A stretch of 63,249 nt of DNA, filler included, from Octopus bimaculoides (lineage: Eukaryota): NCBI RefSeq assembly GCF_001194135.2. It is 5 parts of 5 records of this genome, joined end to end, with 100 filler letters (N's around TTAATTAATTAA, not from the genome) between each part and the next. Parts side by side here need not be neighbours in the genome. Positions count along the whole stretch, not along the records: positions 48,851 to 62,147 come from NC_069008.1; 4 more parts are not named here. One strand, written 5' to 3'. This document shows positions 1,883-62,147 of the stretch, piece by piece. Under the pieces are notes generated by a model, which ran no database searches, was not told the DNA's origin, and saw only the letters and a list, made by a program, of their open reading frames with translations. The position numbers and the translations under genes were made by a program. Each line of letters begins with the position of its first letter. Within the stretch, counting starts at the first letter, position 1.

Positions 1883-4345
1883 TATTTAAAGGACGTGGCG
1901 GTCTTCGCTGTTCAGCCAATACTAAAGATGCATATGGAGTAATTCGTAAGATGAATGTGGCAGCTGACAGATGCTAAGGGGTATTTGATATCAATCTGGG
2001 AGCCTTCGCTCGCTTGGTGTTCGACAACTAGTAGCCTCTCAGCCCTTCAGAGGCGTGTACTTTGTTTCTTTTCTAGATTGTAAATATGTCTCTCGTGTTA
2101 TATTTCGATTCCAGCCCTGTCATATCTCTACTCCAGTGTAGATTTGTTGCAGCCTTCCTGTATAAAATGGTTTCTATTATATTTTTATATCGGTGTTGTC
2201 AATAAAGACATAATAATAGTTATTTTCATTACTTTTATCATTGCTATTACTGCTTCGTCTTTAGTTCAATTAAGGTGTTAAACTATGTTGTGAATCAAAA
2301 AATAATATTAATTATTTTCATTGCTATTATTTTCGTTAGTATTAGGTTGTCAACATTTTTATTACATTCGTTTTTGCTTAGTCTCATGAATCTCGGCTAT
2401 GATTACCAGCTCTCAAATCACAACTCCTATCTTAGAATGGTACATTGTCTACTGGAGACATTGATGCATTGCGTCTTGGAAAACTACGAGATGGTCACGC
2501 CCGAATAATTTTGAACATATAGCCATTCATTCGACTAAATTTCAAACTGATTAAACGTGATATGAAGCTTTGTGAATAATTAAACATCTTAACAGTAAAC
2601 TTTACAGCAATAATGGAGATGTTAACATAGAGTTACCAGCTAATTGTGCTCAGCAGAAGCTCTATGACCGAATACCTATGTAGTTCGTTTCACAAACAGG
2701 AGGTTGTGGATTCAATCTCACTGCGTAACGTTATGAGGAAATCTAATTTTCTGTAGTCTAGGGACGATACATGCTTTGAGAGTGTATCTGAGTACATGAT
2801 AACAGTATAGAAGCCCGTCTGATGGATTGTTCCTATAATTCAAATGTAAAGCCTTGTCATATGCATTACGTCGTACTGATTCTGCCCGAGAATTAGGCTG
2901 AAGATTAACACGTGTGTGAAATCAGACATCTATTCCTTAATACAGGAGTGGGTTATTCAGTTGATAGAGCAGATATATATATCTTCATCGTCAAACGACA
3001 GATATCCATCATCATCATCACCAGTTTTCAATCTAGATAATGACGTGACAGAATCATTAGAATGTTGGACAGAATCCGTCTGTTTATCCTGTGAGGTCAA
3101 ATACCGCCAAAGTTAGCATTGCCTTCCACCCTTTCGGGTTTGATAAAATATCTTCCTGTCTAGGACGATGCGCAGGAGGCTGTTTTTCAACATCATACGT
3201 TTTACGGCTGTTCGGATTCTGTATGGATTCAGAAATTAACTGAAGCAGGAACTTTATTTCAACCACAATATTGTAACAAAAGGGGCAATTTTCATATTTT
3301 ATTATTTTATTTATGGTATTTAAAACAAAATGTGACATTTTTGGAGGGATTAGTAACCGAAAATATGCCACATTGTGCATGCGTCTTGTTTTTTGCCTTT
3401 ATATTCACACATTAAGTAACATAACTGTTTTTGTTTCTTGGAAATAATAAAGATCCTATTCTATAAAGATCTGGCACAATTCAAGTGTCTTAAATACTTT
3501 CGGTTACCCTGAAACTATTAGTTGGATGTACAACATTACTATTGTCGTTTTCTTGTTTGCACTTCATTATAGAATTGATTGTATTAACTGCCTCACAGAA
3601 ATCTTCTCTTTTGTCACATATCAAGCTTATGCAGTTGTATAGTATCTTTATATTTGATGCTATCAGCTATTAATGAAGATTCTATTTAAATAATTCACCT
3701 TTAATTATTGTTCCTTCGCATATTAGCTTTGAATAACTTAATTACTAGAAACACACGCAACTGTGACAATAAATAATACAATAACGTATATTAAGGGGTC
3801 TAATTGTATCCTGAAGATTACGATCAAGTAAAATAGACTGAACAACTGATGAACAACAAAATGTAATAGATTTTGTAACATAGACGTAAGACATGAAATT
3901 TATGGTAGAGGAATAATGGATTATATCGACTCCAGTTTTTGATTGGTACTCTATTTCATTGTCCCCTTCGGATGAAGAGCAATTTCACTTCGTAGGATTT
4001 GAAATCAGAATACATAACGCTGAAACATACCGGAAGTAATTTTGGCCGATGCTGTACTGATTCTCTTAGCCCATAGCTATTAAAAGTCCAGTTTCTGATA
4101 CAGGCATGAGGCCAGCAATTTCGGCAAATCGATCACATCATCTGGTACTTATAGTATCGATCCCAGGATGGTTGAAATGCTAAGTCGACCTTGGTGGAAT
4201 TTGAACTCAGAACTTAAAGACGAACGAAATGCCGATAAGGATTTGTCTCGGTGCGCTAACGATTCTGTCAGCTATCTACCTTAGCAACAACAACAACAAC
4301 AACAATAACAACAACATCAGCAACAAAAACAACAGCAACAAAACC

Positions 4346-15250: not shown

Positions 15251-17487
15251 GGCAAGCAATCAAGAACACTGCAATTTATAGTATACATATTACTCAAAGA
15301 AATTCCAACTCTGTTTTTCACGTTTTATTTATAAACTTATAATGTTCATATAAGATATAAAATAATATAGTAAAAAGAAATGAAATGAAGTGTTGTCTAT
15401 TCTTATTGAACAAATGAAATATTAGATGTCCATTCTTATTGAACTAGAATACTTTCTGCCATTTATGCAATCTTCAGGTTTCATATAGTGGTGTTGATAG
15501 TTGTATTCATTGGTTTCAACTATGGTTGACTGGTTGAATTTTGTCCTTTATATACATTCCTGTGGATAGAAGTAGTAATTGCTTGGCTATTTTTAGAAAT
15601 GATGCCAAACCATTTTTTAGTGGGTTTTTTTTTTAGATATGTTGACAGCAGTACTTCTTAGAGAATTTTATTTTTTAGGTATGGCGATAAGATTTTTAAA
15701 CCTTAAATAATTTTTATCATTGTTTATTAAGATTGGTTTGAATTTATCAATAAAGTCCTTTTCTCTTGATTGTCTTAGCCCGTTTGCCTTCGGACGCTTG
15801 CGTTTTGTTAGTTATTATCAGTGTATTTTGGCGATTTAAATGAAAGTTTTGACTGTTATTTCCAGCAGGTAAACATACTTAGTATAACCTTTGATTAATT
15901 TTAATCCTTTAGTTATATATATACAATGCTTCTAGACCATTGCGTGTGTGTTAAGGGGAGAGAGATAGAGAGAAAAACACGTGTGGTTTGTGAGCATGTT
16001 AGTGTGCATGTAATTTCGTAAATATTTGTGTGTGAAGGTATATAGTCATTACGTCCGGATGAAAATATAGAAGTACATGATAACCATTATGCAATATAGC
16101 AGTCTGATTTTTACATGATAAATTGCTGTTTTAATTATATATTACACGTTCATTAATCTCTGTCTCGTATTCGATGATATTTTGATATTAATTTAAGTCA
16201 TGACCAAGCAATGTTTTAATAAGTCACTTATAAGATTATTATCGAAACGTAATGCTCGTTTACGCTCGGAAATTTTTTTTACTAATATTCGCAAATTAAT
16301 AACGGGGTGGAGAAAACAAATGAGCCATATTTATGATGCAAAAATGAAATATTGTAATCATGATATATATATATAACTTCATCATGCAATTGTTTCTTAT
16401 TTTGTATGCTTTGCTATTTATATGAATAGATATACATTTCCAATCTTCACATAAAAATTACTGCAGCACGTATATCGATTTTTGAGGGCATGAAAGAGAC
16501 ACAGGCATATTAGATATAACCAAATTTCAGATGCGCATAAATAAGAAAACAACAAAACAAAACAAAAACGCTTTTAGCGACTTAAAGCATGTAATATTTA
16601 AAGCATGTAAGAGGTAGATTATAAAACATTACAAAACTACTTAAGTAGAAAGTTTGTATGTATAAGTAATAATGATAATGCTGAAATGTTATAATTATGG
16701 AGCTTTGTAGAAAAACCACTTGGTTAAAATTAGTTTATTAGAAGTGATTGTCCGGGATAAAATTAGCTTACGGGGCTCAAGTTTGCATATAAGATTCGGA
16801 GCTATATTGTAGACATTTTTTCCTGAAAAAAGTGCGTTTAATATGACATCAAATACGGTAAGAAGATAATTACATAATAAAATCTTTTGAAATGGAATCA
16901 TATTTTCATAACGGAGTTTTAGCTATTAACTCCGTTACTGGTTGAAAACATGAAGTTATATTTATTGATAATACATTTTTTCTAACTAAAGCAAACAGGA
17001 ACCTGACTGAATAACAAAACTTGACACACGATTAGTGAATCCTATTTCCACAAGATAACATTAAAACACTATCCATATAAACAATAAAGATTTTCAAAGG
17101 CCAAGATGAGAAATGGTACTTGTCATTTCCGCTTTTGGTGATGCAGTAACCAGAGTCTGACTCATTGAAAACCTGTGTGTAATCTAATGCACAACGAAGT
17201 TACTGTTCACCGGTATATTATCGTATATTATAGAGAGAAAGTGAAAAAAAGTCTTAGTTAACACCTCTCTATGCACCAATAAAAGTTAAGAACAGGCAAG
17301 TTATTGTGAAATGACATATGAATTAGTTCATATGTAGATTTGTGTTTCAGGAACACTTATAGCCATGTAAATAAAAGTGAATTAATGTATTACACACGTT
17401 CTCACTTGAACTCTGATATGGAGAAAAGAAATGGAGATTTATGAGCTAAGAGCTGAAAATCTTATTTCGAAGGTTTTACCGTATGTA

Positions 17488-48850: not shown

Positions 48851-48903
<53 letters not shown>

Positions 48904-48987
48904 ATTATTGATAGACTGAATGATTGATTTGGTGATTGACAAACGCTTCCTATTCACCTTGTCATGACAATTCAACAACGCTAAAAT

Positions 48988-49189
48988 ATTCTTTTCTATT
49001 CTAGGCACAAGGCCCGAAATTTTGGGGAAGATCGACCCTAGTACGCCACTGGTACTTAATCTATCGACTCCGAAAGGATGAAGGACAAAGTCGACCTCGG
49101 CGGAATTTGAACTCAGGACATAAAGACAGACGAAATACCGCGAAGCATTTCGCCCGGCGCGCTACCGATTCTGCCAGCTCGCCGCCTTA
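48988..49189 (-). mobile_element. SINE family D
   Basis: gacctcggcggaatttgaactcag...ctgccagctcgccgcctt. Other copies at 52622-52812, 4098-4283 and about 29090-29240. Confidence 0.85.
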
Positions 49190-49289
49190 CAACGCTAATA
49201 TATAAGAATACACACACACACAAACACACACACCTGTTTGCAAACAGAAGTACAGTGAATAGAATTATAAATTTAATTGAGATTCGAAC

Positions 49290-49647
49290 CTTTGAATGGT
49301 GGGACCCAGTTTTTGACGTCCGAAGATGGTTTGACGTGGTAGTAAGTGTCATAGACGGTCCAGTCAGTGAAGGCCGATAGCTTGTTGGAGTATTTCTGCA
49401 AAGAACGACTAACTTTATCCAAAGAATCGCTTGTGTCTTCCATATGTCTGTAGGCGCTGATTAAGCCATGATAGTAAACTTGGGCGCTGATTTCACCGTT
49501 CTTGGGATCGAATACCAGGACTTTTATATCGATGCTTGTCAATGCTTTCTTCAAAGTAGCGATTTCTTTCTTCACAAATCGAATGACTTTGTTTTTCAGG
49601 TCGGGAAGGACTTCTTCAAGGTGTAAGTAACCGTAGGATTTCAGTAC
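49290..49647 (-). CDS. LLTP last visible exon, 358 bp (VLKSYGYLHL...NWVPPFK)
   Basis: Acceptor cctatag|, probable donor G|gttcga (weaker, phase 1). Read-through hits a stop 5 codons later. Confidence 0.85.
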
Positions 49648-50422
49648 CTATAGGAGATAGACATACACATGTATGATAGATATATATATACTGACTTAGC
49701 TTCTCATGTTATTCAAAGTTTCGTGCATGTGAAAGGACGTCCAGCTCATCAGACATTCAGAAACACACGTATACACACACACGCATATATATATAATATA
49801 TATACTCACATACATATTTCCCATATACACACACACATATAAATACATACACAGACACATGCATACATACATTGAGAGACAAACAGACAGGCCAGAAGTT
49901 GTCTACTTTCAAATGCATCCAATTATCCGTCGATACGTTATACATATTCAATGGTACCTAGTTACATCCAGGTAGACTGAGCTCGCTGGGTTTTGCTCAT
50001 CTTTGCTCAGTCATCGTTAGCGACAAGTTAGATATTCACCGGATCAATGAAAGAGCTTCCACGTGGCTTGATGGCCTGCTAGAAATAGCAGCAAAATTTC
50101 ACTCAAATCTCATCTTGCTTTTATAAATGAAGAAGGGCGCGAAACAATGTATGCTGTAGTTATTGGGACAGCCATGTTTGGAATGTCACTGATCATATGC
50201 CCGCCTGATTAAGACTGACTGAGGCTGAATAACATCAACAACAATAGCAGGACACATGGGGTCCTTGATAAAAGATGGCTTGATTACGGCTGGAACATCT
50301 GTGATGAGAGATTTGTTGGTACAGGACTGACCTGGGGTTAAGCAATGACATACAACAACGATGACAACAACAACGATGACAACAACAACGATGACAACAA
50401 CAACAGCATCTGAGTGTCTTAC

Positions 50423-50604
50423 GTGTTTGTAAATATCATTGGAGATGCTGAGCAGGAGATCGACCAATGGGTGGGAGAGAACAGCAATGTCACCATGTTC
50501 GGCTATAAATTCCTCTTTCATGTCGTTCACTGCTTCGTACATGCTGACCATGTAGTCAACGGCTTTAGCAATGAATGGATGTTTTTTAATCTGTTCTTGG
50601 AAGC
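50423..50604 (-). CDS. LLTP exon, 182 bp (RFQEQIKKHPFIAK...NDIYKH)
   Basis: Acceptor tttctcag|, donor CAC|gtaaga; phase 1 in, phase 0 out. Confidence 0.9.
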
Positions 50605-50912
50605 CTGAGAAAAAAAAGAGTCAAACAAGCAGAAAATTTAGTTTTGGATAACAAAGAAATTGTGATGGAAAGCAACGTAGAAAGGTTTCTCAATCGCGTG
50701 AAATTAAAGTTCGATTTATATAAAAAGGCACTTCTAAACTGTGTTTTTGAATAAATGAATGTTTTAGATCAGCTTGATTATGTGTGTGATATATTTGAAT
50801 GATAAAAAGACAATTTTCACTGCGGTTTGCCATGGAGAAAATAGTCATTTAATGGCGCCCATTGGCGGAACGATGTCGCCAGTTTATGAAGCTGAGTTCA
50901 ATGCCTACTTAC

Positions 50913-51054
50913 GTTTCATTACAGCTGGGAACTTGCTGATATAGGTGTTGATCTCTTGGTGGAGGGAGGTGAAGTGTTGGAATCCATTGTTAAATTGTTG
51001 TTCAACGTATAGGAACATCTCATCAATATGGTGAAACAGCTCATCCTTTGCAGC
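50913..51054 (-). CDS. LLTP exon, 142 bp (AAKDELFHHIDE...KFPAVMK); absent from the ORF track
   Basis: Translated by hand. Acceptor gttgcag|, donor C|gtaagt; phase 0 in, phase 1 out. Confidence 0.9.
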
Positions 51055-51547
51055 CTGCAACGAGAATAAAACTTACACTCTTAGTATTTTCATATTGGAA
51101 AGCGTGGGAGATGACAAGGGAGGTAATTAGGGAGGTGACAAGGGAGATAATTAGGGAGATGATGCTAAAAAGAACGAGTAAACTGACGACAACGACGACG
51201 AGGAGGATGACTCTTATCTGATGCTGGTTAACTGCAAAAAGGTGATGGCGTAGGGGTCAACATAGAAGGGCACGTTTGATGATATATTCCTAGATATACT
51301 ATGTCTGAATAAAAAATGAGATAGTCTTATCGGCTGTAGGATCCTTGATCATAGGTCTACTGGATCAGCACTGACCTGTGGCTAAACAACATTAACAACA
51401 ACAGCAAACGCAATAAACTGAGACAGAAAGTCGAATGCTTGGGATTTTTGGTGTTCTTCATTTTTGGAATTGTTTTCCTTTCTTTTTTCTTTAAATGTTT
51501 TTATGCCAAGAAAATTGTCACCATAGAAACCACATGTCCAAACTCAC

Positions 51548-51964
51548 CTGATAGCGGTTTTCGAAGTCGGAATAATATGAGTCAACCATTATTTTAGCTT
51601 CGTCAAGTTTGTCGGTCATGTAGGCGTTGAATTCTTGCATTCGTCTCTTCATGTGTACGAGACTGTTCTGGTAGCTGGTCCACATTGATTCCCAGGCTTC
51701 CATAACTGAATCACCCACGCTTTTCATGTAGAAGACATTCCTGCCATAGAATTCGGCAACTTTGGCGGCGTGTTTAGCGACGTCTTTGTAGATGTCGTTG
51801 TAAACGGAAGGGAGGTAGTTGGTAATTGGTACCAGATCTTCTTGGAAGACTCTCTTAATATCTTTCAGTTTTGACATGAATTCTTCAGAAACACTCTTTC
51901 CAATAGTTTCACCAAAGGTCTGGATCTTTTGTCCGTAAGTCTGGAAAACGGCAAAACCATAATC
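51548..51964 (-). CDS. LLTP exon, 417 bp, start of amphipathic helical region (DYGFAVFQ...FENRYQ)
   Basis: Acceptor ttcttcag|, donor CAG|gtgagt; phase 0/0. Confidence 0.92.
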
Positions 51965-52100
51965 CTGAAGAAAAAGAAAAAGGAGGAAAAACAATTGATT
52001 AGAATGTTGTGAAATCGATAATCGATTAGATGTTTAGTATAGTCGCAGTCATTAATCTCATGGGTTATTCTATACTTTTGTAAAGTACAAATTTCTTCTT

Positions 52101-52188
52101 ATACAAGAATGTTGTTGACAGTGACTTCAAAGTTTCGGCTAGCTACACCATCGAAACTTCGAAGTCATTGACAACAACATTCTTGTAT
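52101..52188. other. Inverted repeat/hairpin, 37-bp stem and 14-nt loop, in LLTP intron
   Basis: 34 of 37 stem positions are Watson-Crick complementary. Confidence 0.95.
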
Positions 52189-52275
52189 GAAAAGAATACA
52201 CCCCCCCCCCTACACACACATGTCACCTGTTAAACTGTCTGAATAAAAGACAAAAGAGTGAGTTTGGGAACTTAC

Positions 52276-52460
52276 AGTGATTTCCTTGAGCATCTGGGTG
52301 TTCCATAAAAGCTGGAAAAACAGAATACTTGAGGGTCTCATTTCTATGATCATTTTTCCGTCTCGATTCACCTTCTGCTGTCCCAAAGTCCTGTAGGCCT
52401 TCATCATAAGCTTTCTGTCCATGACTTCTCCATCGATGTGGAACACTTTTTCAGGGTTGG
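52276..52460 (-). CDS. LLTP exon, 185 bp (ANPEKVFHIDG...LLWNTQMLKEIT)
   Basis: Acceptor tttacag|, donor ACT|gtaagt; phase 1 in, phase 0 out. Confidence 0.9.
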
Positions 52461-52621
52461 CTGTAAACATAAACGAAACATTAAGGTACGTGCATGGGTA
52501 GTGTAATAAACGAAACAGCCCCTATAAATATTAACTGTTTTAGGGTTTAAATGATGTAGGGCTTAACTGATTTAAAGGTTAATTACTTAAGGGTTAACTT
52601 TTTTAAGGGTTAATTGATATA

Positions 52622-52812
52622 CCTTTCGGGGAAGGGGATAAATCGATTGCATCGACCCCCAGTGCTCAAATGGTACTTATTTTATTGACCCCCCGAAAAG
52701 AATGAATGGCAAAGTTGACCTCGGCGGAATTTGAACTCAGAGCATGAAGACGGACGAAATGCTGCTAAGCATTTTGCCCGGCGTGCTAACGTTTCTGCCA
52801 GCTCACCGCCTT
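52622..52812 (-). mobile_element. SINE family D in LLTP intron
   Basis: Close match to 48988-49189. Confidence 0.85.
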
Positions 52813-53069
52813 GTCTATGTGATCTCAAATTTTAAAGCAAACACATAATTTTCTTATGGTTTCTTAAACATTCACTTGAACAAAACTGTACAAATCCAAA
52901 TATATGGTACCCTAGGCATAACACCAACATGAACTTCTAACTTGTTGTCTCTTGAGGTCTCTGGGTGAGACTCGGATCCGACTTGTACAAATGCAAAACA
53001 AAAGTCAAACATAAAATAATAATAATAATAATAAGGTAAAAAAGGAAGCAACATTTAAAAGAAGGTTAC

Positions 53070-53235
53070 CTTGGTCGTAGTTTAGCTCGAGGTGCATATT
53101 TTTGGCGTTAGGGCTGATTGATGCTGTGGCCTGCATGTCCTTCATACCAGATTCTCGTTTGTTCAAAGACATTGAATACTGTTTGTTGGTGTCTAGGGAT
53201 CCAGTGATTTCAATATGCTTCTTGGGAGACACAAT
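53070..53235 (-). CDS. LLTP exon, 166 bp (IVSPKKHIEITGSL...LELNYDQ)
   Basis: Acceptor caccag|, donor G|gtaacc; phase 0 in, phase 1 out. Confidence 0.85.
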
Positions 53236-53802
53236 CTGGTGATTAGAATAAGGTTTAATTAATATAATGATCGTATATATAATTAACATATTATACATAC
53301 ATACATACGTACAATCGAATTACATAGTTTAATTAATGTAATCGCTGTTAAGTTTCATAATTACTGGAGGGGAGGAGTAAAGTGGTTCTTCTGTGAGGTT
53401 GTTCCATCTACTAGAAATAGCAGTCGAATTTCCAGAAATTACATCGTAATATATATATTCCAAAGCAAAAGTCGTTGTATTATGTAATCGTAGATGCCCA
53501 ATGACTAAATAGTTGGGATGGTCACAGAAGGAAGTTCTTTGATCAGGGATACGTTGGAATAAAATCGATTTGGGATTAAGCAACAATGAGAACCCCTTTG
53601 AACGATGTTGTTCTAAATAAAGATTTTAGAAAAAAATATTTGGTTTTCGTTACATTTCAAACACCATTTTAAAAATAAAATAGGAAAATATGGGGGCATG
53701 TTTTAAGTGCAAAGTAGCTCTGTCCCCTCATTTTCTGGATGTCTTATTTCCTTTAAGGGACTTTAAGATTACAAATGCATGCTTAGCGGGAAGTGTGCTT
53801 AC

Positions 53803-54126
53803 CTCAAAGATGGCTTCCCGTTGGATCTTGTTGATGTCCGTCCTGATGATGTATTTATCATAATGGCGTCTATGGCCGGCGTAGTTGAGTTCCACACCGG
53901 TGCTAATTCTTCCTGATTTGGCGGCTGCGTACGCCATCACAATGAAAGCGAGTTTCGTGTATGGTTGTTCGACAAGGAAGTCCAAAGTGTAGTTGCCTCT
54001 GTTGTCAGCCAGTTTCATGTCCACAGTCAATGCTTTGCGGGGATCTTGGTCAGCGCTGAACTGGAATCGGCTACTGAACATGGTGTCACCACGACGGCCA
54101 GTGAAGATTGTTTTAAAATGCATACC
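53803..54126 (-). CDS. LLTP exon, 324 bp (GMHFKTIFTG...QREAIFE)
   Basis: Acceptor ttttcag|, donor GAG|gtaagc; phase 0/0. Confidence 0.9.
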
Positions 54127-54700
54127 CTGAAAATGGATAAGATGAAGATATATANNNNNNNNNNNNNNNNNNNNNNNNNNNNNNNNNNNNNNNNNNNNNN
54201 NNNNNNNNNNNNNNNNNNNNNNNNNNNNNNNNNNNNNNNNNNNNNNNNNNNNNNNNNNNNNNNNNNNNNNNNNNNNNNNNNNNNNNNNNNNNNNNNNNNN
54301 NNNNNNNNNNNNNNNNNNNNNNNNNNNNNNNNNNNNNNNNNNNNNNNNNNNNNNNNNNNNNNNNNNNNNNNNNNNNNNNNNNNNNNNNNNNNNNNNNNNN
54401 NNNNNNNNNNNNNNNNNNNNNNNNNNNNNNNNNNNNNNNNNNNNNNNNNNNNNNNNNNNNNNNNNNNNNNNNNNNNNNNNNNNNNNNNNNNNNNNNNNNN
54501 NNNNNNNNNNNNNNNNNNNNNNNNNNNNNNNNNNNNNNNNNNNNNNNNNNNNNNNNNNNNNNNNNNNNNNNNNNNNNNNNNNNNNNNNNNNNNNNNNNNN
54601 NNNNNNNNNNNNNNNNNNNNNNNNNNNNNNNNNNNNNNNNNNNNNNNNNNNNNNNNNNNNNNNNNNNNNNNNNNNNATATATATATATATATATATATAC

Positions 54701-54850
54701 ACGGTGGGCTTCTTTTAGTTTCCATCTACCATATCCACTCGCAATGGTTATAGAAGAAAACAGTGGCCCAGGGTGCCGTGCAGTAGGACTGAACCCCGAA
54801 GCTTGTGGTTAGGAAGCAAACTTCTCCGCCGTACAGTCACGCTTGTGCCT
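54701..54850 (-). mobile_element. SINE family A head in LLTP intron
   Basis: Diverged match to 19443-19601. Confidence 0.8.
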
Positions 54851-55044
54851 TCTCGAATAATTGTTGCGCAAATGTAAATATAAAAGATGCGTGTAAATAA
54901 AATGTGCTGACTTCTCTAAGCATGAATGTAATGCGTTTACGTAATGCCTCCCGAATGTTGAGAACGACAAATGACGAGTCAATGGCTGAGACGTACAACA
55001 GTGAAAAAGACCAACTCAAAGACAAACAAAATAAGGTTACTCAC

Positions 55045-58000
55045 CTTTTTCTGGTTGGGGAATTTGACGATCGTGTTCATGGTGTAGATGTTTATGCTCT
55101 GAATAGAAATATCAGTTGTTATTTCAATCTTCTCGTTTCTGTTGTTGACGTCAGGTGTCAAGGTGAACATGGCAGTATGTTGATCACGATGATTTTGAAC
55201 ACTTCCGGTCAGCTGGATGGTACGACGGGGTAAGATCAAACTAAGGAGAGCTTCGTTTCCGCCTGAAGTTTTCATTTGAAGTTCTGCTCCTATTTTCTGA
55301 GTGTCTTTCTCTCCCCAACTGTATTCAGCCTTCATTGTGTACATATCAGAAGATTTCTGGAGATGGAAATTTCCAGTCAAGTCGCCATCATTGCCCATCA
55401 CTTTCAAAGTGATTTTTCTGGAAAAAGTAGATCTGCTGTCATTGTTAACGTATGCCATAGAAGTTTTAAACTGTTTATCCTTGTCGCTGCGGTCTCTTTG
55501 TAAATCGAGCTCAACATTGAAGCCGTTGCCGGTATGAACAAAGGTTGCACTGTACAACTGTTTAGGAAGGGTAACACTTGCTTTCAAATGCCTGTTGGCA
55601 TCACGTTCGGCAGAGATGGTTAAATCTTTCAAGTTTCTCAATGGGGTCCTCATCTGGAAGTTTCCACTTGTGAAACGACCATCATGAGAAGCCTTCGATG
55701 TGATGACGTATTTTTCGTTCTTGTAATCCATCTTAACATTGTAAGAATATTTCTGCTGGAAGCTTACTTCTACGTCATAGCCTGCAAGTCTGCTCATGGT
55801 GTTGGTTTCAATGTGTGCTTTGCTTTTGAAGGACGTTCTAGTCAGTTCGTGTTGATAAACCAGAGTAACGACACCTGTCGACTGAGATTTCAATGTCAAT
55901 GATGATTTGATCCGGTTCAGTTTCATTGGATCAACAGTGATCTTCATGTGAACGTCGCCGGTGTGAGTGTTATCAAGGTCAAAAGAAGCTGTCAGACCAC
56001 GTGACAGATTTACGTTGGTCTTTACCGAACTTTCCCTTCCATTTACGTTTACGATGAATGACTGGGTGAACTCGTTTGTATCAAAGTTTGTTTGAATGTC
56101 AACATTGGAGTTGATTGCTGTCTGACTTGATTTCAGCGATGATTTCATTTGCATCACGAACTGTCTCTGGTCCAGTTGAACATCAACATTGTTCTCCAAA
56201 AGGTAGTCTCCAAACGTGGCCTTCACGTGGCTTTTACCATTGGCCATGTTGCCGGTGTTTTCAACCAAGATTTCGAGGTCACTAGAATAAGGCCTGGTCA
56301 TACGGACGACCATTTGTTTGAAGTTATCGTTGATCATCTTCACTTTGTAAGTGTTTCCGTTGTTGGACAGCCGAGCGTTCATACTAAAGTCCTTGATGTG
56401 TTCATTGAATTTTGCCTTGATCTCACCTGCGTTATTGGGAGAAGAAAAACTGATCAAAAGGTCTTTAGTCTCTAAAGAGAAATTACACTGATACATGTCG
56501 TTGTTGTTCAGGAAAAGCACAGACAAAGAACGGTCCTGTAGCTGGAAGGTGAGTTTTTGTACACCCAGTTCAGGAGTGGACATATTGAAGCTCATATAAT
56601 CGAAATAATTCACGTTGGAAGCAGCAAATTGGTAACTGTTGTAACGGTAGACCAATTTTGTCTTGAAGCTCGAAGACTTAAATCCATCCATGATGTCTCC
56701 TGACAAACTGAAGAAGGGTGACTTGAAGCTGAGGGTGTATGTGTGAGTGTCAACATTTACTGAGGTTGCAAAAGAATATTCAGTCTTCTTGCGCAGTAAC
56801 TGAGTGTTCAGATGGAAATTTCTCAAATCGCCACCAAAGTCAAATTTCAGCTCGTTGTGTCCAAGTTCTGGTGTGGTCAGTTCAGCGTTGATTCCTTTCA
56901 TGTAGTTTTGATTGGAAAGAACCAGTTTGTATTGTTGTTTGTCGATGGTCACTCCGGCGAAGGCCTTGAATCTTTTTAGTTCTCCTTCAAAGTCCAGCTT
57001 AGCTTTGACTCCTGGGAAATAGACGTTGATGTCCAAAGTCTTGTAGTATGCCTTATTGGAGGCTGTCACTTCATAGATGTCCTTGTTGTGTTGTAGTTTG
57101 AGAACAACGTTGAACTTCTTCAATTTACCGGAAATGGTAAGAGTGAGGTCATCGTTGAAGGAAGGAGCTTTCAGGTCTCCCTTGATAACCATCTTACGTC
57201 CAAAGTTCTTGTAGGATCCTCCCAAAGTGACTCTTTTCTTGTTGTACACGAAGGTAGCATCGCCGGTGACGCCGTTTTTCTTGGCATCAATGCTGCTTTT
57301 AACAACGACCTCGTGTCTCGGAATTGACATAGTCACTCTCATCTGTTCGTAATAGTCTTTATTGGAATAAGTAATTTCATATTTTGTTTTTCTAATCAAA
57401 ACACTGAACATTCCGTTCAAGTTTTTGAGAGTGTTATCCATCTTGATATATGCTTCAAAGTTGAAAGGTGTTTTAAGGTCGAAGGTGATTTTTCTGTAGA
57501 ATTTTTCGTTGGAAACTTTCATCAGGAAAGCCTCTTCGTTGTGTTTAGCCTCAAGGATCAAGTTGAACATCTCCGGTTCTCCGTCTAGTGTAAAGTCCAG
57601 AAGGTCGTTGAATGAAGGGGTTCCCAAATTGGCCTTGATACGCCGGAAGTAGTCCTTGTTGGACAAAGTGAATTCGTATTTGCCGTTATCGTGAATCATC
57701 TCAGCTTGGTATCGGAACATTTTCAAATTTCCACTCAGTGTCATTAAGAATTGACAGTTGTGGAATGGAGACACGATTTTGAACATGATTTTCGACATAT
57801 GTTTGTAAATGGCATTGAATTTGTAATTGTCAGAACGTGTTTGTAGGAAAAGGTCAAGATCAGCAGAAATGTCCTCAGGGTCCAGGGTCAAATCCATATT
57901 GAATTTCACTCCTTTCGGAGCAACAAGTTGTAAGGTGATCTGCCTGCCATAGTTGTGGATCGACATGTCGCTTGTATATTGGTCTCTGTTTCCAATTTTG

Positions 58001-60189
58001 TGGGACAGAGTCATAATCATTTCATCGAAGTCGCCATTCCTAACAAATTGAGTTTCCCAATCATCGTAGTTTCTCAGACTGATCTTGGAGGAGATTTCTG
58101 TGTGTTTTGGTTGGTTCTTCATGTTGCTGCTGAACATAAATTCCTTGGCTGCCTTTATCTGGAGACTGGAGTCCATATTTTGATGCGTGACATCAAAAGA
58201 GAATTCGTTATACCTTCTATGAGATGTGGTAGCAACCATGTTTACTTTGAAATCGTTGACACTGTTCATGTTGTACAAACCCTTGAAAACGAACATTTTT
58301 CTATCGTTGAATTCAGTTTCAAAATTAACGGTCTCGTACTGTCTCCAGTTACCTTTCAGCGACAGAGTAATTTTTCCTTGTCTTATAGTATCAGAGTGAG
58401 TTTCGAGTTCAATACTGGCGTCGGTCCTGTCCTTTGATTGACTTGCTTTCAATTGGAGTTGCTCCAGATATGGCAACACTTTCACCGATGCCCTAGCCAT
58501 GGAATCTCGGCCCCCTGTTTGGTAAGAAACTTCCACGTTCATATTTGTAAGGGAAGGAAAATCAGGACTATCAACATTGAAAGAATATGTCTTCCTCTCT
58601 CCGTTAAGGAATACAGTTTGAGCTTTGATCTGCCTGCTGTCTGGAAGTCCTAAATGAACATTTATCTTATGACTGGAAGATTCTATCTTGTAGTTTCCAG
58701 ATAACAAAAGATTCTTACCACCAGATCCGATACGTATTTCACTATCGAAATAGCGGCCAGCTTCGAATTCAACGGCACCGTCCACCGAGGCATCGATGGA
58801 ACCTGACTTTATCTCGGCATGGGATGTTTTCCTTGCACCAGACATATTCAAGTTGAAGGAAGCTGTCATCGTCTTACCGTCTGGTCCTGTCATTTGTGCA
58901 TTCACATCGAAGTTGTCTTTCAGTCTTGCGTATTCAGCATTCATTTTCATTAATTCCCCGTTGTTGCTTGTAACTGTCACACTACCTTTCAGCCTCTTGG
59001 GTAACCCTTTCACTAGCACCGCTGATATCCCTCCGTTTTTGTAATAACGCAAAGTGCTGGTGTAGGCAAGATTAATCGAAGATTTAGCTTGGTTATGCTT
59101 CAGTGAATATGAACCACCGATGGAGTTGATTCTGTAATTTGGCAGATTAATTTCACAGTCACCGCTTGAAGTCATTTCTCGATCATCGCTCTGCAGGGCA
59201 ATCTTCATGTGACCTTTAGCATCAAACATATCAAAAGTCAAGCTTGCATCACTGTTCATCTGACTCCTGTCTACATTATGGGCCATATTCACATCAAGAT
59301 AGGTTTTCTTTTCTTGTTTCACCAAAAGCATGGCGGTCTTTTTGACGTCGTTGTTTTTCAAAGCAATTTTCACATCTGTCGTTACTCGGTTACGCAAATG
59401 CATGAAATTGTATTCAAATTCTTTGTCAAAAGAATTCAAAGTCATGTCTTGTTTCATCTCAATTCTGTTGTCATTGCTTCTCAAAATGCTGTGGGAAGAA
59501 TACGAACATTTCTTGTTGGTGGTAACACGTTCAATGGTTTCACTGTAACTTTGAAGACTCCTAAACGGTGTAGTGATGCTAAATTTGGAGGTTGATCTCC
59601 TGCCAACCACACCGACTAACGATGCAGTAGCACTTATTTTTCGGTCCTGTGCCCACTCTAACAAAAGATCTCCGTTGCCGGATATATCAGTTTTACTGGT
59701 GTCATACTGAACAGACGCAACAGCTTTGTAGTCAATGTTCTGCTCAAGTGAGAGAATCTGTTTGTCAACGTGAAGTTCGGCCATTGCTTTGTAATTACGA
59801 TCAGCCGTGTTGAGAGTGGTGGTCAGTTTAGCTTGTCTCTGGTTGGGTAAGCTGAGCTGGTTGTCAACCATCACAACTTTGGGACTGTTCCTGAAAGTTG
59901 TCTTCAGTTTTACCATGGTCTCCTTTTGCCATTGGGCGCATACTTCGTTCTCGTAAGTATCTGTGTTGAGTTGTACCAATTTCTCTTCGAATTCCACGAC
60001 TCTGTCGGGATAAGCAAGAGACACCTTCACATCGGTGTTCTGCAAACCCTTCACTTTGACGTTGCTGTAGAACAAACCAGTTTTCACCAAATAGCGAGGA
60101 GAGATTTGAAGCATGATGTTGTTCTCAATCTTTCTCATGGGGGAGGTTGCAGTATGGAAATGGTCGGCTTTCACGTGGAAGTTGACATT
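55045..60189 (-). CDS. LLTP giant exon, 5,145 bp / 1,715 codons, amphipathic beta-strand region (NVNFHVKADH...KFPNQKK)
   Basis: Lies inside the 1,781-aa ORF. Acceptor tttttttgtcttgaacag|AAT, donor AAG|gtgagt; phase 0 at both ends. Confidence 0.93.
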
Positions 60190-60493
60190 CTGTTCAAGAC
60201 AAAAAAAGAGAAAGAGAAATTTGAAGGTTAAGTCAAGATTTTCTTGTATACTGTTACTAGTCTCATTTCCCAAGTCGCGGCCATGTTGGAGCATAGCTTC
60301 TAAGGGACATTTTAAATAATTCATCTTCCAACAACTGTAACTCCATCATGACAGTCACTCAACTGTGACTGTAGCTGTTATTGGAATCACTCAGTTGTGA
60401 ACGGATTTAGAACTGGAATCACTCAGCTGTGACAACGTACCTAAATACTCTCTATGTATATTGGGCCACCCTTACGGCAACCAACATTTCACA

Positions 60494-60800
60494 TGGACCT
60501 GCTGGAAATAGCAGCTGCATTTCACTCTAATCACAGCCAATCTTCTAAAATAACGTAACGACAAAGCAAGACGCATTTGATAATGTAGCCCTAGATGCAC
60601 TATGCCTGAGTAAAAGATGACATGTTCACAGCTGGAACATCTTCGATTAAAGATCTGACTGGATCAGAACTGACCTAGGGCTAAACATTAAGAAGACAGG
60701 AGACATTCGATAAAAAAAAAATGGAATGATCATGGCTGGAGCGTCTTTGATCGTTGGCCTATCGGATCATGTCTGACCGAGGGCTCAGCAGCAACAACAA
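60494..60800 (+). mobile_element. SINE family E 3' portion with duplicated 3' end, in LLTP intron
   Basis: ctgctggaaatagcagc...ggatcagaactgacctagggctaaac. Related pieces at 50075, 50270, 51220-51405, 22688 and 2400-2530. Confidence 0.75.
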
Positions 60801-60890
60801 CAATGAAGAAGAACGCATTAAGTAATGTAGACCTAAATACAGCAGCAGCAGTAGCAGCAGCAGCGGCGGCGGCGATTGATGTTATCTTAC

Positions 60891-61107
60891 CTTTCCGGGA
60901 TGTTTCACTGACATAGCAAAGTTATATTCCCTTGCCACTGATTTGGTCTTGTAGTTGATCACAGAGTTCACTTTGAGGTTGTTCAGGGCCTTGTTTTTCG
61001 GGTTGCCATAAGTGAGATCGACGTTGGTGTCCAGGTGGTTGTTAGTTTTGGTCAGCTTGCTCTTCACGTTGAAATTTAGCCAGTTGCTCTTCTTGCTAAT
61101 CAAGTCA
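60891..61107 (-). CDS. LLTP exon, 217 bp (ADLISKKSNWLNF...KHPGK)
   Basis: Acceptor ttacag|, donor AAG|gtaaga; phase 2 in, phase 0 out. Confidence 0.9.
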
Positions 61108-61156
61108 CTGTAACGAATAATTCACATGCAAAGTAAGTGGAGGGAGCATAGTGAAA

Positions 61157-61390
61157 CATCATCATCGCTTTACTGTCCACGTTTCTATGCTGACATGGGT
61201 TCGACGGGAATTTTTCGAGACAGATTCTTCTTTTTTATGGCAAAGTGCCTTTCCTGTCACCAACCCTCATCATGTTTCCAAGCAAGGTAACATTTTCCCC
61301 ATGGTCAGACATGTTTTTCGCGGAAGATTGGAAAGAAACGACATCACCTGTACAACGGTGTTGTTTGTTTACAACTATCACGTGACGAAG
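61157..61390 (-). mobile_element. SINE family F (catcatcatc tail; core reminiscent of V-SINE-type domains)
   Basis: Matches 22252-22485 (tttccaagcaaggtaa...agacatgtttt) and the reverse complement of 21170-21270. Confidence 0.7.
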
Positions 61391-61625
61391 TGAATGAAAG
61401 TGATAGATGAAACCGATTTATTGAAGGGGTATTTCTCAACGATATAATATATTAAACCAGTGTAACTTAGATGGAACCATCCCTATAAGACGTTTATATA
61501 TCCTCGTATTGACGCTATATATATATGTGTGTGTGTGTGTGTACATACATGAATGGATGTATATTTATTTGTATGCATATGTATGTGTGTGTGTGTCTAT
61601 GGATCACTAGAGAGTGGTTACTTAC

Positions 61626-61860
61626 GCGGTGCCGGAGTAGGTAGCGGCGTTCTTGGTTCTTACGGTTCTTGTCTTGGCAGAGAGTGTGAGACGGTCCGAG
61701 TATTTGGCACCAAAGTTGTAAATGGCAATTATTCTGCTGCTGATTCCGAGAGGTTTGGAGTCTAAGTCGATGTTCAGCTTGCAACTACCCTGTGGTGACT
61801 TAAATATGATTCGAGCAGTGTCTCTGCTCTTGGCTTTACCAACATTCATAGAAGTAAGTG
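61626..61860 (-). CDS. LLTP exon, 235 bp (ALTSMNVGKAKSRD...TYSGT)
   Basis: Acceptor cttcag|, donor GC|gtaagt; phase 1 in, phase 2 out. Confidence 0.9.
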
Positions 61861-61977
61861 CTGAAGCGGGAAACGATATATATATATATATACATATATG
61901 ATTAATAAAAAAAAAAAAGAAAAAGCAAAAACACAATCAGAAAGAAAAGACAACAACGCGAGGACGTCATGACTTAC

Positions 61978-62147
61978 CATTCAGATAAATTGGTTTGGAG
62001 AACACTTTGTCAAGATTCATTTCCAGATTTCCCTTGCCTTTCCCATCATGGCTGATAGTGGATTCGAACACGACTACATCTTTACCGGATATCATAACCT
62101 TTATGTAAGGACTATATTTGAAACCAGATTTTTTGGGAACCTTTCCA
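61978..62147 (-). CDS. LLTP exon, 5' part lost in assembly gap (GKVPKKSGFKYSPYIKV...KPIYLN)
   Basis: Open frame from the gap edge to the donor AATG|gtaagt; phase 1 matches the next exon. Confidence 0.85.

What the first reader, a model, noticed from the sequence alone, without database searches (positions are those of the whole stretch)
56263..57735. About ten tandem ~49-aa beta-meander repeats inside the giant exon
Seen in the translation, consensus roughly G-x-L-K-x-F-x7-H-x4-Y-x4-S-N-x2-Y-x9-T-P. Examples: SGNLKMFRYQAEMIHDNGKYEFTLSNKDYFRRIKANLGTP; DGEPEMFNLILEAKHNEEAFLMKVSNEKFYRKITFDLKTP; SGKLKKFNVVLKLQHNKDIYEVTASNKAYYKTLDINVYFP; EGELKRFKAFAGVTIDKQQYKLVLSNQNYMKGINAELTTP; KTKLVYRYNSYQFAASNVNYFDYMSFNMSTP. 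About 490 aa in total, with alternating hydrophobic residues. Established: apoB-100 wraps LDL with a continuous amphipathic beta-belt. Inference: a modular four-strand unit was amplified to lengthen the belt, so repeat number could set lipoprotein or yolk particle size. I do not recognise this repeat as a named family.
Basis: partly seen in the sequence, partly recalled or inferred. Interest (0 to 1): 0.72.

Follow-up and report, generated by a model that had tools for sequence, protein, structure and literature searches.

The report
Repeated beta-sheet module in octopus lipoprotein
A giant exon of an octopus apolipophorin/apoB-type lipoprotein gene holds a real tandem array of about twelve ancient 49-residue units. 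Each is predicted to be a four-strand lipid-facing beta-sheet, and copy number differs (3, about 11, about 27) between related genes, so the lipid-wrapping "belt" was apparently lengthened module by module.

Summary
On the minus strand, 56263-57735 is in frame inside a 5,145-nt exon (55045-60189). It encodes ten tandem units of 45-55 aa with the stated consensus. Seven units are highly significant in leave-one-out HMM tests and three are degenerate. Two more degenerate units lie upstream, so the array spans 56245-58020.

The gene is Octopus bimaculoides A0A0L8H8F7. It is colinear with a 3,794-aa Argonauta protein carrying Vitellogenin_N, the open beta-sheet domain, DUF1081, VWD and C8, which marks an APO-family large lipid transfer protein.

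AlphaFold2 predicts exactly four amphipathic strands per unit, within a continuous beta-meander that also covers the N-terminal flank of the exon. Foldseek's best fold matches for that flank are the human apoB100 structures.

No Pfam family matches the unit. An exhaustive HMMER scan of 1.84 billion representatives found the array in only eight proteins, all octopod or from one unnamed ENA assembly. Copy number varies: 3 in short octopus paralogues, 9-13 in most, 27-29 in one.

Modular amplification of the belt is supported. Control of particle size by repeat number remains untested. This is a new variant of a known kind, of moderate interest.

The parts
55045..60189 (-). Giant coding exon (5,145 nt, 1,715 codons) of an APO-family LLTP gene; encodes amphipathic beta-meander ('belt')
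   Evidence: 100% identical to UniRef A0A0L8H8F7_OCTBM. Splice signals are present at both ends. It is 55.6% identical over 1,728 aa to Argonauta P0009 residues 1226-2951. AF2 models of exon residues 1-760 (pLDDT 80) and 715-1320 (pLDDT 68) are all-beta, about 100 strands in total. Period-2 hydrophobic moment is 1.13-1.25 along the whole exon, against 0.805+-0.033 for shuffles.
56245..58020 (-). Full tandem array: 12 contiguous units of about 49 aa (exon residues 724-1315)
   Evidence: hhalign of the unit profile against the ortholog alignment tiles residues 724-1315 without gaps. Self-HH off-diagonals appear at multiples of 50 residues. AF2 gives four strands in each unit (in U3 a fifth short stretch at the unit boundary belongs to the next unit's first strand).
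56263..57735 (-). The finding's interval: the ten units recognisable by eye (491 aa)
   Evidence: In-frame translation matches the quoted peptides. Supported by autocorrelation and leave-one-out HMM statistics.
57865..58020 (-). Unit U-1 (degenerate), MIMTLSHKIG...DPEDIS
   Evidence: Not in the training set. HMM i-E 1.2e-5; hhalign P 8.9e-5; four predicted strands.
57727..57864 (-). Unit U0 (degenerate), ADLDLFLQ...MTLSGN
   Evidence: Not in the training set. HMM i-E 1.5e-3; hhalign P 5.5e-4; four predicted strands.
57577..57726 (-). Unit U1 (well preserved)
   Evidence: Leave-one-out score 41.7 bits, z=11.2. Best matches are positional orthologs in P0009 and P0002.
57430..57576 (-). Unit U2 (well preserved)
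   Evidence: Leave-one-out score 19.7 bits; 0 of 300 shuffles reach it.
57265..57429 (-). Unit U3 (well preserved)
   Evidence: Leave-one-out score 27.9 bits; 0 of 300 shuffles reach it.
57124..57264 (-). Unit U4 (degenerate as a repeat, but conserved between genes; first of the three-unit core shared by all paralogues)
   Evidence: Leave-one-out score only 4.5 bits. Strongly conserved in P0009, P0002, P0010 and the short paralogues.
56980..57123 (-). Unit U5 (well preserved; core)
   Evidence: Leave-one-out score 31.7 bits. It is the best-conserved unit across all proteins.
56827..56979 (-). Unit U6 (well preserved; core)
   Evidence: Leave-one-out score 25.0 bits. Present in the short paralogues.
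56683..56826 (-). Unit U7 (degenerate)
   Evidence: Leave-one-out score 6.2 bits; 1 of 300 shuffles reach it. Four predicted strands in register.
56542..56682 (-). Unit U8 (well preserved)
   Evidence: Leave-one-out score 28.5 bits.
56398..56541 (-). Unit U9 (degenerate)
   Evidence: Leave-one-out score 4.8 bits; 1 of 300 shuffles reach it. Four predicted strands.
56245..56397 (-). Unit U10 (preserved)
   Evidence: Leave-one-out score 16.6 bits; 0 of 300 shuffles reach it.
60891..62146 (-). Upstream coding blocks of the same gene (62146-61625 and 61109-60891), matching P0009 residues 1020-1226
   Evidence: tblastn of P0009 and of the P0001 N-terminus. The gene runs off the piece's edge here.
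49210..54129 (-). Downstream coding blocks of the same gene: 54129-53770, 53238-53065, 52461-52264, 51964-51560, 51042-50911, 50602-50411 and 49647-49210, matching P0009 residues 2952-3568
   Evidence: tblastn of P0009. The last five blocks are absent from the public model P0001.

Best explanation
The segment is a tandem array of twelve units of about 49 residues (seven well preserved, five degenerate). It lies inside the giant exon of an Octopus bimaculoides APO-family large lipid transfer protein, an apolipophorin/apoB-type lipoprotein scaffold.

Each unit is predicted to fold as a four-strand antiparallel beta-meander: b1 (~10 aa), a two-residue turn at H-N, b2 (~10 aa), a turn at S-N-x-x-Y, b3 (~8 aa), a loop with T-P, b4 (~9 aa), then a G-x-L turn. 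One face is hydrophobic and the other polar. The conserved residues sit at the turns and keep the register.

The units join edge to edge with each other and with the non-repetitive flanks of the exon. Together they form one long amphipathic sheet of the kind that wraps the lipid core in human apoB100.

Inferred steps: the array arose by old tandem duplications inside the exon, so each unit adds about 2 nm of lipid-covering belt. Gain or loss of units gave paralogous genes with short (3 units), medium (9-13) and long (27-29) arrays.

Shown: the repeat, its extent, the host gene family, the predicted fold, amphipathicity and copy-number variation. Inferred: lipid contact, the duplication mechanism, and any effect on particle size.
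For: Repeat statistics.

Independent confirmation in sequences not used for training: Argonauta P0002 units score 21-45 bits.

Host gene:
- 100% match to A0A0L8H8F7_OCTBM, with 'apolipophorins-like' paralogues.
- The colinear Argonauta protein P0009 has Vitellogenin_N, Vit_open_b-sht, DUF1081, VWD and C8. It matches the piece from residue 1020 to 3568.
- DUF1081 is APO-family specific according to PMC1783640.

Fold:
- AF2 model of exon residues 715-1320 has 50 strands, four per unit (pLDDT 68).
- AF2 model of residues 1-760 has 54 strands (pLDDT 80).
- Beta hydrophobic moment is z=8.6 against within-strand shuffles.
- Foldseek: for the flank model the four apoB100 entries 9e9r, 9ea7, 9bdt and 9bde are the top hits (E 4e-8 to 7e-7, prob 1.00, TMq up to 0.42). 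For the array model they are hits 4, 6, 7 and 8, with the highest TMq values.

Not generic composition: the flanks are equally amphipathic, yet the unit HMM gives only insignificant matches there (i-E 0.12 and 0.39).

Copy number: 3 in five short Octopus vulgaris/sinensis paralogues, 9-11 in the window gene and two Argonauta genes, 10-13 in ENA proteins P0010 and P0014, and 27-29 in P0011+P0012. The 3-unit form lies in one uninterrupted genomic reading frame.

Units 4-6 are the positional core shared by all genes.
Against: - There is no experimental evidence that this protein binds lipid or forms a particle, and no expression data.
- The AF2 confidence for the array is only moderate (pLDDT 68; the other four models 39-57), from an alignment of 5 sequences.
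- TM-scores to apoB100 are low (0.25-0.42). The global curvature of a lipid-free model is meaningless, and Foldseek also matches other long beta-meanders (teneurin YD shell, LptD, OspA).
- No sequence similarity to human apoB was found, either with the unit profile or with the whole exon.
- Five of the twelve units are so degenerate that their homology rests on position, length and weak profile scores.
- The direction of change (expansion or loss) in the short paralogues is not resolved.
Confidence: 0.75

Rival explanations
1. The array is real and belt-like, but the number of units does not set particle size. Paralogue differences would then be neutral length variation, sub-functionalisation unrelated to size, or decay in pseudogenes. 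Particle size would be set by lipid supply and by belt sliding, as proposed for apoB100.
For: - In apoB100 the belt is proposed to tighten or loosen and to slide past the N-terminal domain over a range of particle sizes (PMC11839476).
- The longest array (P0011+P0012) is interrupted by a +1 frameshift, which could mark a pseudogene or a read error.
- Array length is unchanged among the three colinear octopod proteins (606, 607 and 616 aa).
Against: From my own knowledge, not checked here: truncation series of human apoB show that particle core size scales with apoB length. Length classes of 3, about 11 and about 27 units within intact reading frames of several genes look like retained variants.
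Confidence: 0.35
2. The array is not part of the lipid-contacting belt. It would instead be a separate beta-rich domain projecting from the particle, comparable to the proline-containing beta-hairpin inserts 6 and 8 of apoB100. Such a domain could serve receptor binding, clotting, adhesion or immune recognition.
For: [quoted passage not shown]
- The top Foldseek E-values for the array model go to the teneurin YD shell, not to apoB100.
- LLTPs with a VWD domain have non-transport roles in other animals (my own knowledge).
Against: - Strand length, turn spacing and period-2 amphipathicity in the array are indistinguishable from those of the flanks, whose best fold matches are apoB100.
- AF2 places no linker or helix between the array and the flanks.
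- The apoB100 hits have the highest TMq and prob 1.00 for the array model too.
Confidence: 0.12
3. The periodicity is not due to duplication. It would be convergence, because any amphipathic beta-meander of fixed width shows a period of about 12 or 25 or 50 residues and a biased composition.
For: Mean identity between units is only 20%. Three to five units are barely above shuffles. There is no DNA-level repeat.
Against: - Specific residues recur in register at turn positions (F, H-N, Y, S-N, Y, T-P).
- Leave-one-out scores reach 42 bits.
- The flanking 1,100 aa of the same exon have the same amphipathicity, but the unit HMM gives only insignificant matches there.
- In the ENA species the units are far more alike (local alignment scores up to 123 within one protein and 193-203 between paralogues), as expected for younger duplicates.
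Confidence: 0.04

Closest known systems
Human apolipoprotein B100 beta-belt (cryo-EM entries 9e9r, 9ea7, 9bdt, 9bde; PMC11839476)
   Same: - Both are long continuous antiparallel amphipathic beta-sheets following an LLT module. Strands are about 9-11 residues here, against a mean of 11 in apoB100 (120 strands, 1,774 residues, about 61 nm).
- apoB100 is the best Foldseek fold match for the exon flank and among the best for the array.
- Both are encoded largely by one giant exon. For APOB exon 26 this is my own knowledge.
   Different: - No detectable sequence similarity.
- The apoB100 paper does not mention a sequence repeat, duplication or motif in the belt.
- apoB100 has nine interstrand inserts totalling 1,779 residues, about 60% amphipathic helix. 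The 1,320 modelled octopus residues contain no helix longer than 4 residues.
- apoB lacks the C-terminal VWD domain.
Insect apolipophorin-II/I and crustacean apolipocrustacein (APO family of LLTPs; PMC1783640)
   Same: The domain order is the same: Vitellogenin_N / LLT module, DUF1081, a long central region and a C-terminal VWD. This is seen in the colinear Argonauta protein P0009 and in the Octopus paralogues named 'apolipophorins-like'.
   Different: The 49-aa unit was found only in eight proteins, from octopods and one unnamed ENA assembly, among 1.84 billion representatives. No arthropod or vertebrate APO protein was retrieved. Cephalopod genes occur as several paralogues with different array lengths.
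Other repetitive beta-hairpin sheets: teneurin/Rhs YD-repeat shell, Borrelia OspA single-layer sheet, LptD
   Same: Local geometry is shared: successive antiparallel hairpins forming a long curved sheet. These are Foldseek hits with E 1e-5 to 1e-2.
   Different: There is no sequence relation. The TM-scores are lower than for apoB100. The YD shell and LptD close into a shell or barrel, and neither is part of an LLTP.

Membership tests
APO family of large lipid transfer proteins (apoB / apoLp-II/I / apoCr) | N-terminal LLT module (Pfam Vitellogenin_N PF01347 plus open beta-sheet PF09172) | tested here: inconclusive
   This part of the gene lies outside the piece, which starts at the equivalent of P0009 residue 1020. 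It is met in the colinear Argonauta protein P0009 (E 1.5e-90 and 4.5e-41) and in Octopus paralogues P0003-P0006.
APO family of large lipid transfer proteins (apoB / apoLp-II/I / apoCr) | DUF1081 (PF06448), reported as specific to APO-family members (PMC1783640) | tested here: inconclusive
   Outside the piece. Met in P0009 residues 818-869 (34.1 bits against a cut-off of 25) and precomputed for P0003-P0006.
APO family of large lipid transfer proteins (apoB / apoLp-II/I / apoCr) | Long amphipathic beta-sheet region C-terminal to the LLT module | tested here: met
   AF2 predicts about 100 strands in exon residues 1-1320. Amphipathic moment is z=8.6, and the period-2 signal runs over the whole exon. 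The apoB100 structures are the top fold matches.
APO family of large lipid transfer proteins (apoB / apoLp-II/I / apoCr) | C-terminal von Willebrand type D domain (apoLp-II/I and apoCr, not apoB) | tested here: inconclusive
   The piece ends at the equivalent of P0009 residue 3568, and the VWD domain spans 3547-3688, so only its first ~20 residues could be present. Met in P0009, P0002 and P0004.
APO family of large lipid transfer proteins (apoB / apoLp-II/I / apoCr) | Dibasic RX(K/R)R furin-type cleavage site separating apoLp-II from apoLp-I | not tested
   The site would lie N-terminal to the piece. It was not searched for in the orthologs.
apoB100-type beta-belt (structural class) | Continuous sheet of ~11-residue antiparallel amphipathic strands | tested here: met
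   Met by prediction only. Strands average 8.9 aa in the array and about 9-13 aa in the flank, and no domain break is seen.
apoB100-type beta-belt (structural class) | Long interstrand inserts rich in amphipathic helices | tested here: not met
   No helix longer than 4 residues and no long non-beta insert occurs in the 1,320 modelled residues. apoB100 has nine inserts of 30-700 residues.
apoB100-type beta-belt (structural class) | Detectable sequence homology to vertebrate apoB belt | tested here: not met
   phmmer of the exon against PDB sequences gave no hit at E<=1. The unit profile gave no apoB hit at E<=10.
Any catalogued repeat or domain family (Pfam-A, 2025 copy) | A match above the gathering threshold over the unit or array | tested here: not met
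   The exon has no family above its cut-off; the best is AltA1 at 17 bits against a cut-off of 27.5. For 61 single units only scattered chance hits appear, none in more than 2 units. Other libraries (SMART, CDD, PROSITE) were not available.

The most novel reading that the evidence does not exclude
Cephalopods may have built a family of apoB-like scaffold genes whose belts differ by whole four-strand modules (3, about 11 and about 27 units). Distinct lipoprotein or yolk particle size classes would then be hard-wired in separate paralogues. Vertebrates instead produce two sizes from one gene through apoB48/apoB100 mRNA editing. The still-recognisable unit would also be the first visible trace of how LLTP beta-belts in general grew, namely by tandem duplication of a 4-strand, ~2-nm module.
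Probability: 0.15. Interest if true: 0.65.

Novelty: new variant of a known kind. Interest (0 to 1): 0.4.

Why it matters
The amphipathic beta-belt is the part of apoB-type proteins that holds a lipoprotein together. Its origin and the rules that set its length are not known, and the apoB100 structure paper read here reports no sequence repeat in the human belt.

This array offers a belt segment whose building block is still legible. The block is a four-strand unit of about 49 residues with conserved turn residues. It comes with natural 'length mutants' among paralogues.

That gives a concrete system for testing whether belt length determines particle size, and a profile for tracing belt evolution in molluscs. 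It does not change what is known about how such proteins work. The host family and the fold are known.

Tried and rejected
- Tandem Repeats Finder on the exon and on the two ENA loci found no period of about 147-150 nt. The duplications are therefore too old to date from DNA.
- A two-unit (~99 aa) super-repeat was suggested by the strongest autocorrelation lag. It is not borne out by the unit-against-unit profile matrix, where scores do not depend on lag parity.
- A word-indexed database search with the 61-unit profile returned nothing, not even the known positives, so it says nothing about distribution.
- The species behind ENA assembly ERZ21867824 could not be named. There are no named close relatives, the clusters are singletons, and no paper cites the accession.
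- An AF2 run of 1,200 residues spanning the array and both flanks failed. It was replaced by a 760-residue run on the N-terminal flank. Exon residues 1321-1715 remain unmodelled and are judged only from their period-2 hydrophobicity.
- Literature searches for a description of this repeat in cephalopod or other LLTPs found none.
- The apparent low-GC stretch next to the exon is an assembly gap of 522 N.
Full report
WHAT IS THERE

The piece (48851-62147) carries one long open stretch on the minus strand, 54979-60324.

The exon is 55045-60189 (1,715 codons). It has a polypyrimidine tract and AG acceptor, and an AAG|GTGAGT donor. The region is about 40% G+C. The neighbouring 'AT-rich' dip is an assembly gap of 522 N.

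IS THE REPEAT REAL?

Yes.
- The 491 residues divide into ten head-to-tail units of 45-55 aa.
- BLOSUM62 autocorrelation peaks at lags 48/50, 99, 149/151, 199/201 and 249. Lag 99 reaches z=6.5, while the largest value in 1000 shuffles was 4.6.
- When each unit is scored against an HMM built from the other nine, seven units score 17-42 bits, and 300 shuffles of the same unit never exceed 10.6 bits. Units 4, 7 and 9 are marginal.
- The same HMM finds two more unit-like stretches immediately upstream that were not in the training set (i-E 1.2e-5 and 1.5e-3).
- Profile-profile comparison against an alignment of the exon with its two Argonauta counterparts tiles exon residues 724-1315 with twelve contiguous units.
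- Self-comparison of that alignment gives off-diagonals at shifts of 50, 100, 200 and 250 residues, with P down to 1e-18.
- Units are only 20% identical on average, 38% at most. No nucleotide-level tandem repeat survives, so the duplications are old.

WHAT GENE IS IT?

The exon is 100% identical to UniRef A0A0L8H8F7_OCTBM, an uncharacterised protein of Octopus bimaculoides. The other hits are Octopus vulgaris and O. sinensis proteins named 'apolipophorins-like', carrying Vitellogenin_N, the open beta-sheet domain, DUF1081 and VWD, plus an Argonauta hians protein.

An exhaustive HMMER scan added a 3,794-aa Argonauta protein, P0009 (GAB1606238.1). It is 55% identical to the window over the array, with nearly the same length (607 against 606 aa).

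P0009 has Vitellogenin_N (3-525), Vit_open_b-sht (558-762), DUF1081 (818-869), VWD (3547-3688) and C8 (3726-3785). tblastn shows that the piece is colinear with P0009 residues 1020-3568 in at least ten coding blocks.

By the criteria of PMC1783640, the LLT module plus the APO-specific DUF1081 plus a C-terminal VWD mark an APO-family large lipid transfer protein, the family of apoB, insect apolipophorin-II/I and crustacean apolipocrustacein. For the window gene itself the diagnostic N-terminal domains lie outside the piece. Membership therefore rests on colinearity with P0009 and on the paralogues.

PREDICTED STRUCTURE

Array model. AlphaFold2 on exon residues 715-1320 (5-sequence alignment) gave an all-beta model of 50 strands, with mean pLDDT 68 and pTM 0.55. 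Laid over the unit boundaries, every one of the twelve units holds four strands in the same pattern:
- b1, about 10 aa, then a two-residue turn;
- b2, about 10 aa, then a four-residue turn at S-N-x-x-Y;
- b3, 7-8 aa, then a loop with T-P;
- b4, 8-10 aa.
The conserved polar residues and the proline sit at turns. Within strands, hydrophobic and polar residues alternate. The mean beta hydrophobic moment is 1.67, against 0.87+-0.09 for within-strand shuffles (z=8.6).

Flank model. A second model, of exon residues 1-760 (10-sequence alignment), has higher confidence (pLDDT 80.4). It is again all-beta, with 54 strands of about 9-13 residues.

Fold searches. Foldseek against the PDB puts the four human apoB100 entries first for the flank model (E 4e-8 to 7e-7, prob 1.00, TMq 0.21-0.42). 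For the array model they are among the first eight hits and have the highest TMq values. The other hits are long beta-meanders of other kinds (teneurin YD shell, LptD, OspA). TM-scores are low, as expected for a lipid-free prediction of a sheet that in life follows a particle surface.

Whole exon. The period-2 hydrophobic signal is the same in the array and in both flanks (1.13-1.25 against 0.805+-0.033 for shuffles). The whole exon is therefore belt-like. Because the unit HMM gives only insignificant matches in the equally amphipathic flanks, the repeat signal is not a by-product of beta-strand composition.

Rough dimensions (inference). apoB100 has 120 strands over about 61 nm (PMC11839476), about 0.5 nm per strand. 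On that scale a unit is about 2 nm and the twelve-unit array about 24 nm. Exon residues 1-1320 hold about 100 strands, about 50 nm.

DISTRIBUTION AND COPY NUMBER

A 617-column profile of the array, scored by HMMER against 1.84 billion representative proteins, found only eight proteins:
- the window protein;
- two Argonauta proteins;
- one representative of the short Octopus paralogues;
- four ORF products from one ENA assembly, ERZ21867824, organism not named. A fifth product, P0014, appeared.

No Pfam family matches the exon or the single units. No PDB sequence, apoB100 included, matches the unit profile.

Counts with the iterated unit HMM (i-E<1e-3):
- window gene: 11;
- Argonauta P0009 and P0002: 9-10;
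- five short Octopus paralogues: 3 each;
- ENA P0010: 12-13;
- ENA P0014: 10-11, colinear with the window over 1,200 aa;
- ENA P0011+P0012: 27-29. These two lie 160 nt apart on one contig and are joined by a +1 frameshift through which units continue.

The 3-unit form is not a gene-model artefact. In O. vulgaris the first 614 residues of P0007, which include its three units (residues 275-412), map to one uninterrupted block in a single open frame.

Units 4-6 are the positional core present in every gene. Most other ENA-species units resemble each other more than they resemble any octopod unit, which points to additional, younger duplications there. Within octopods the twelve units are one-to-one between genes, with almost no length change.

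INTERPRETATION

The best-supported reading is a module of a known machine. The array is a stretch of the lipid-facing amphipathic beta-belt of an apolipophorin/apoB-type scaffold, and the four-strand building block remains visible there because it was duplicated in tandem.

Duplication and loss of whole units changed belt length between paralogues. That each unit lies on lipid, and that it adds about 2 nm of belt, follows from analogy with apoB100 and from the predicted amphipathic sheet. It is not shown.

The apoB100 authors propose that the belt can slide past the N-terminal domain, so it need not be a strict ruler.

Less likely alternatives:
- the array is a projecting beta-domain like the proline-containing apoB100 inserts 6 and 8;
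- the periodicity is convergent. The register-specific conserved residues and the flank control argue against this.

COMPARISON WITH WHAT IS KNOWN

The array works like the apoB100 belt, and the gene belongs, by colinearity, to the APO family.

It differs from apoB100 in several ways:
- no detectable sequence similarity;
- no long helical inserts in the modelled 1,320 residues;
- a C-terminal VWD domain;
- a legible 49-residue repeat. The apoB100 structure paper read here contains no mention of repeats, duplication or motifs in the belt.

I found no paper describing this repeat.

VERDICT

The structural and evolutionary parts of the interpretation are supported, and the size-ruler idea is open. 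This is a new variant of a known kind. It is of moderate interest, mainly as a natural system for testing how belt length relates to lipoprotein size and how such belts evolved.

Noticed in passing
window 49210-53238 (minus strand): The public gene model (A0A0L8H8F7_OCTBM, P0001) stops after the block at 53238-53044 and ends in an implausible 'FFTLLLLLLFYV' tail. tblastn with the Argonauta protein finds five further colinear coding blocks (52461-52264, 51964-51560, 51042-50911, 50602-50411, 49647-49210). The model is therefore truncated, and the gene runs off both ends of the piece.
   Followed up: partly
window 54155-54676: A run of 522 N (assembly gap) lies in the intron just 3' of the giant exon. 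It explains the apparent 22% G+C dip and the spurious ORFs listed across 53728-54753.
   Followed up: yes
L002 10001-20144 (ENA ERZ21867824, contig ctg89107l): Two adjacent ORFs (P0011, 2,127 aa; P0012, 1,199 aa) are one giant coding stretch broken by a +1 frameshift near 16380. Joined, they hold 27-29 units plus a duplicated block of about 470-600 aa of non-repeat belt. This could be a pseudogene or a read error. The organism is unidentified (34% G+C).
   Followed up: partly
Octopus vulgaris OX597841.1 (L003) and O. sinensis contig of 15.1 Mb: Several 'apolipophorins-like' genes sit on the same contig in each species: P0003, P0005, P0007 and P0008 in one, P0004 and P0006 in the other. In L003 the end of one model lies about 300 bp from the start of the next. 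This indicates a tandem cluster of paralogues, some probably split or fused by annotation (P0008 starts with C-terminal sequence and continues with N-terminal sequence).
   Followed up: no
window 50345-50404: A 15-nt tandem repeat (ATGACAACAACAACG, 3.9 copies, 97% matches) lies directly beside the coding block 50411-50602. Whether it is coding, as a short low-complexity insertion, or intronic was not determined.
   Followed up: no
window 48851-48900: A (TA)n(TG)n microsatellite lies at the very start of the piece.
   Followed up: no
exon residues 1479-1532 (window 55594-55755, minus strand): One isolated, weak unit-like match lies downstream of the array (hhalign P 0.0014). The corresponding Argonauta P0002 stretch (1519-1560) passes the unit HMM. 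It may be a stray thirteenth unit or a chance match.
   Followed up: partly
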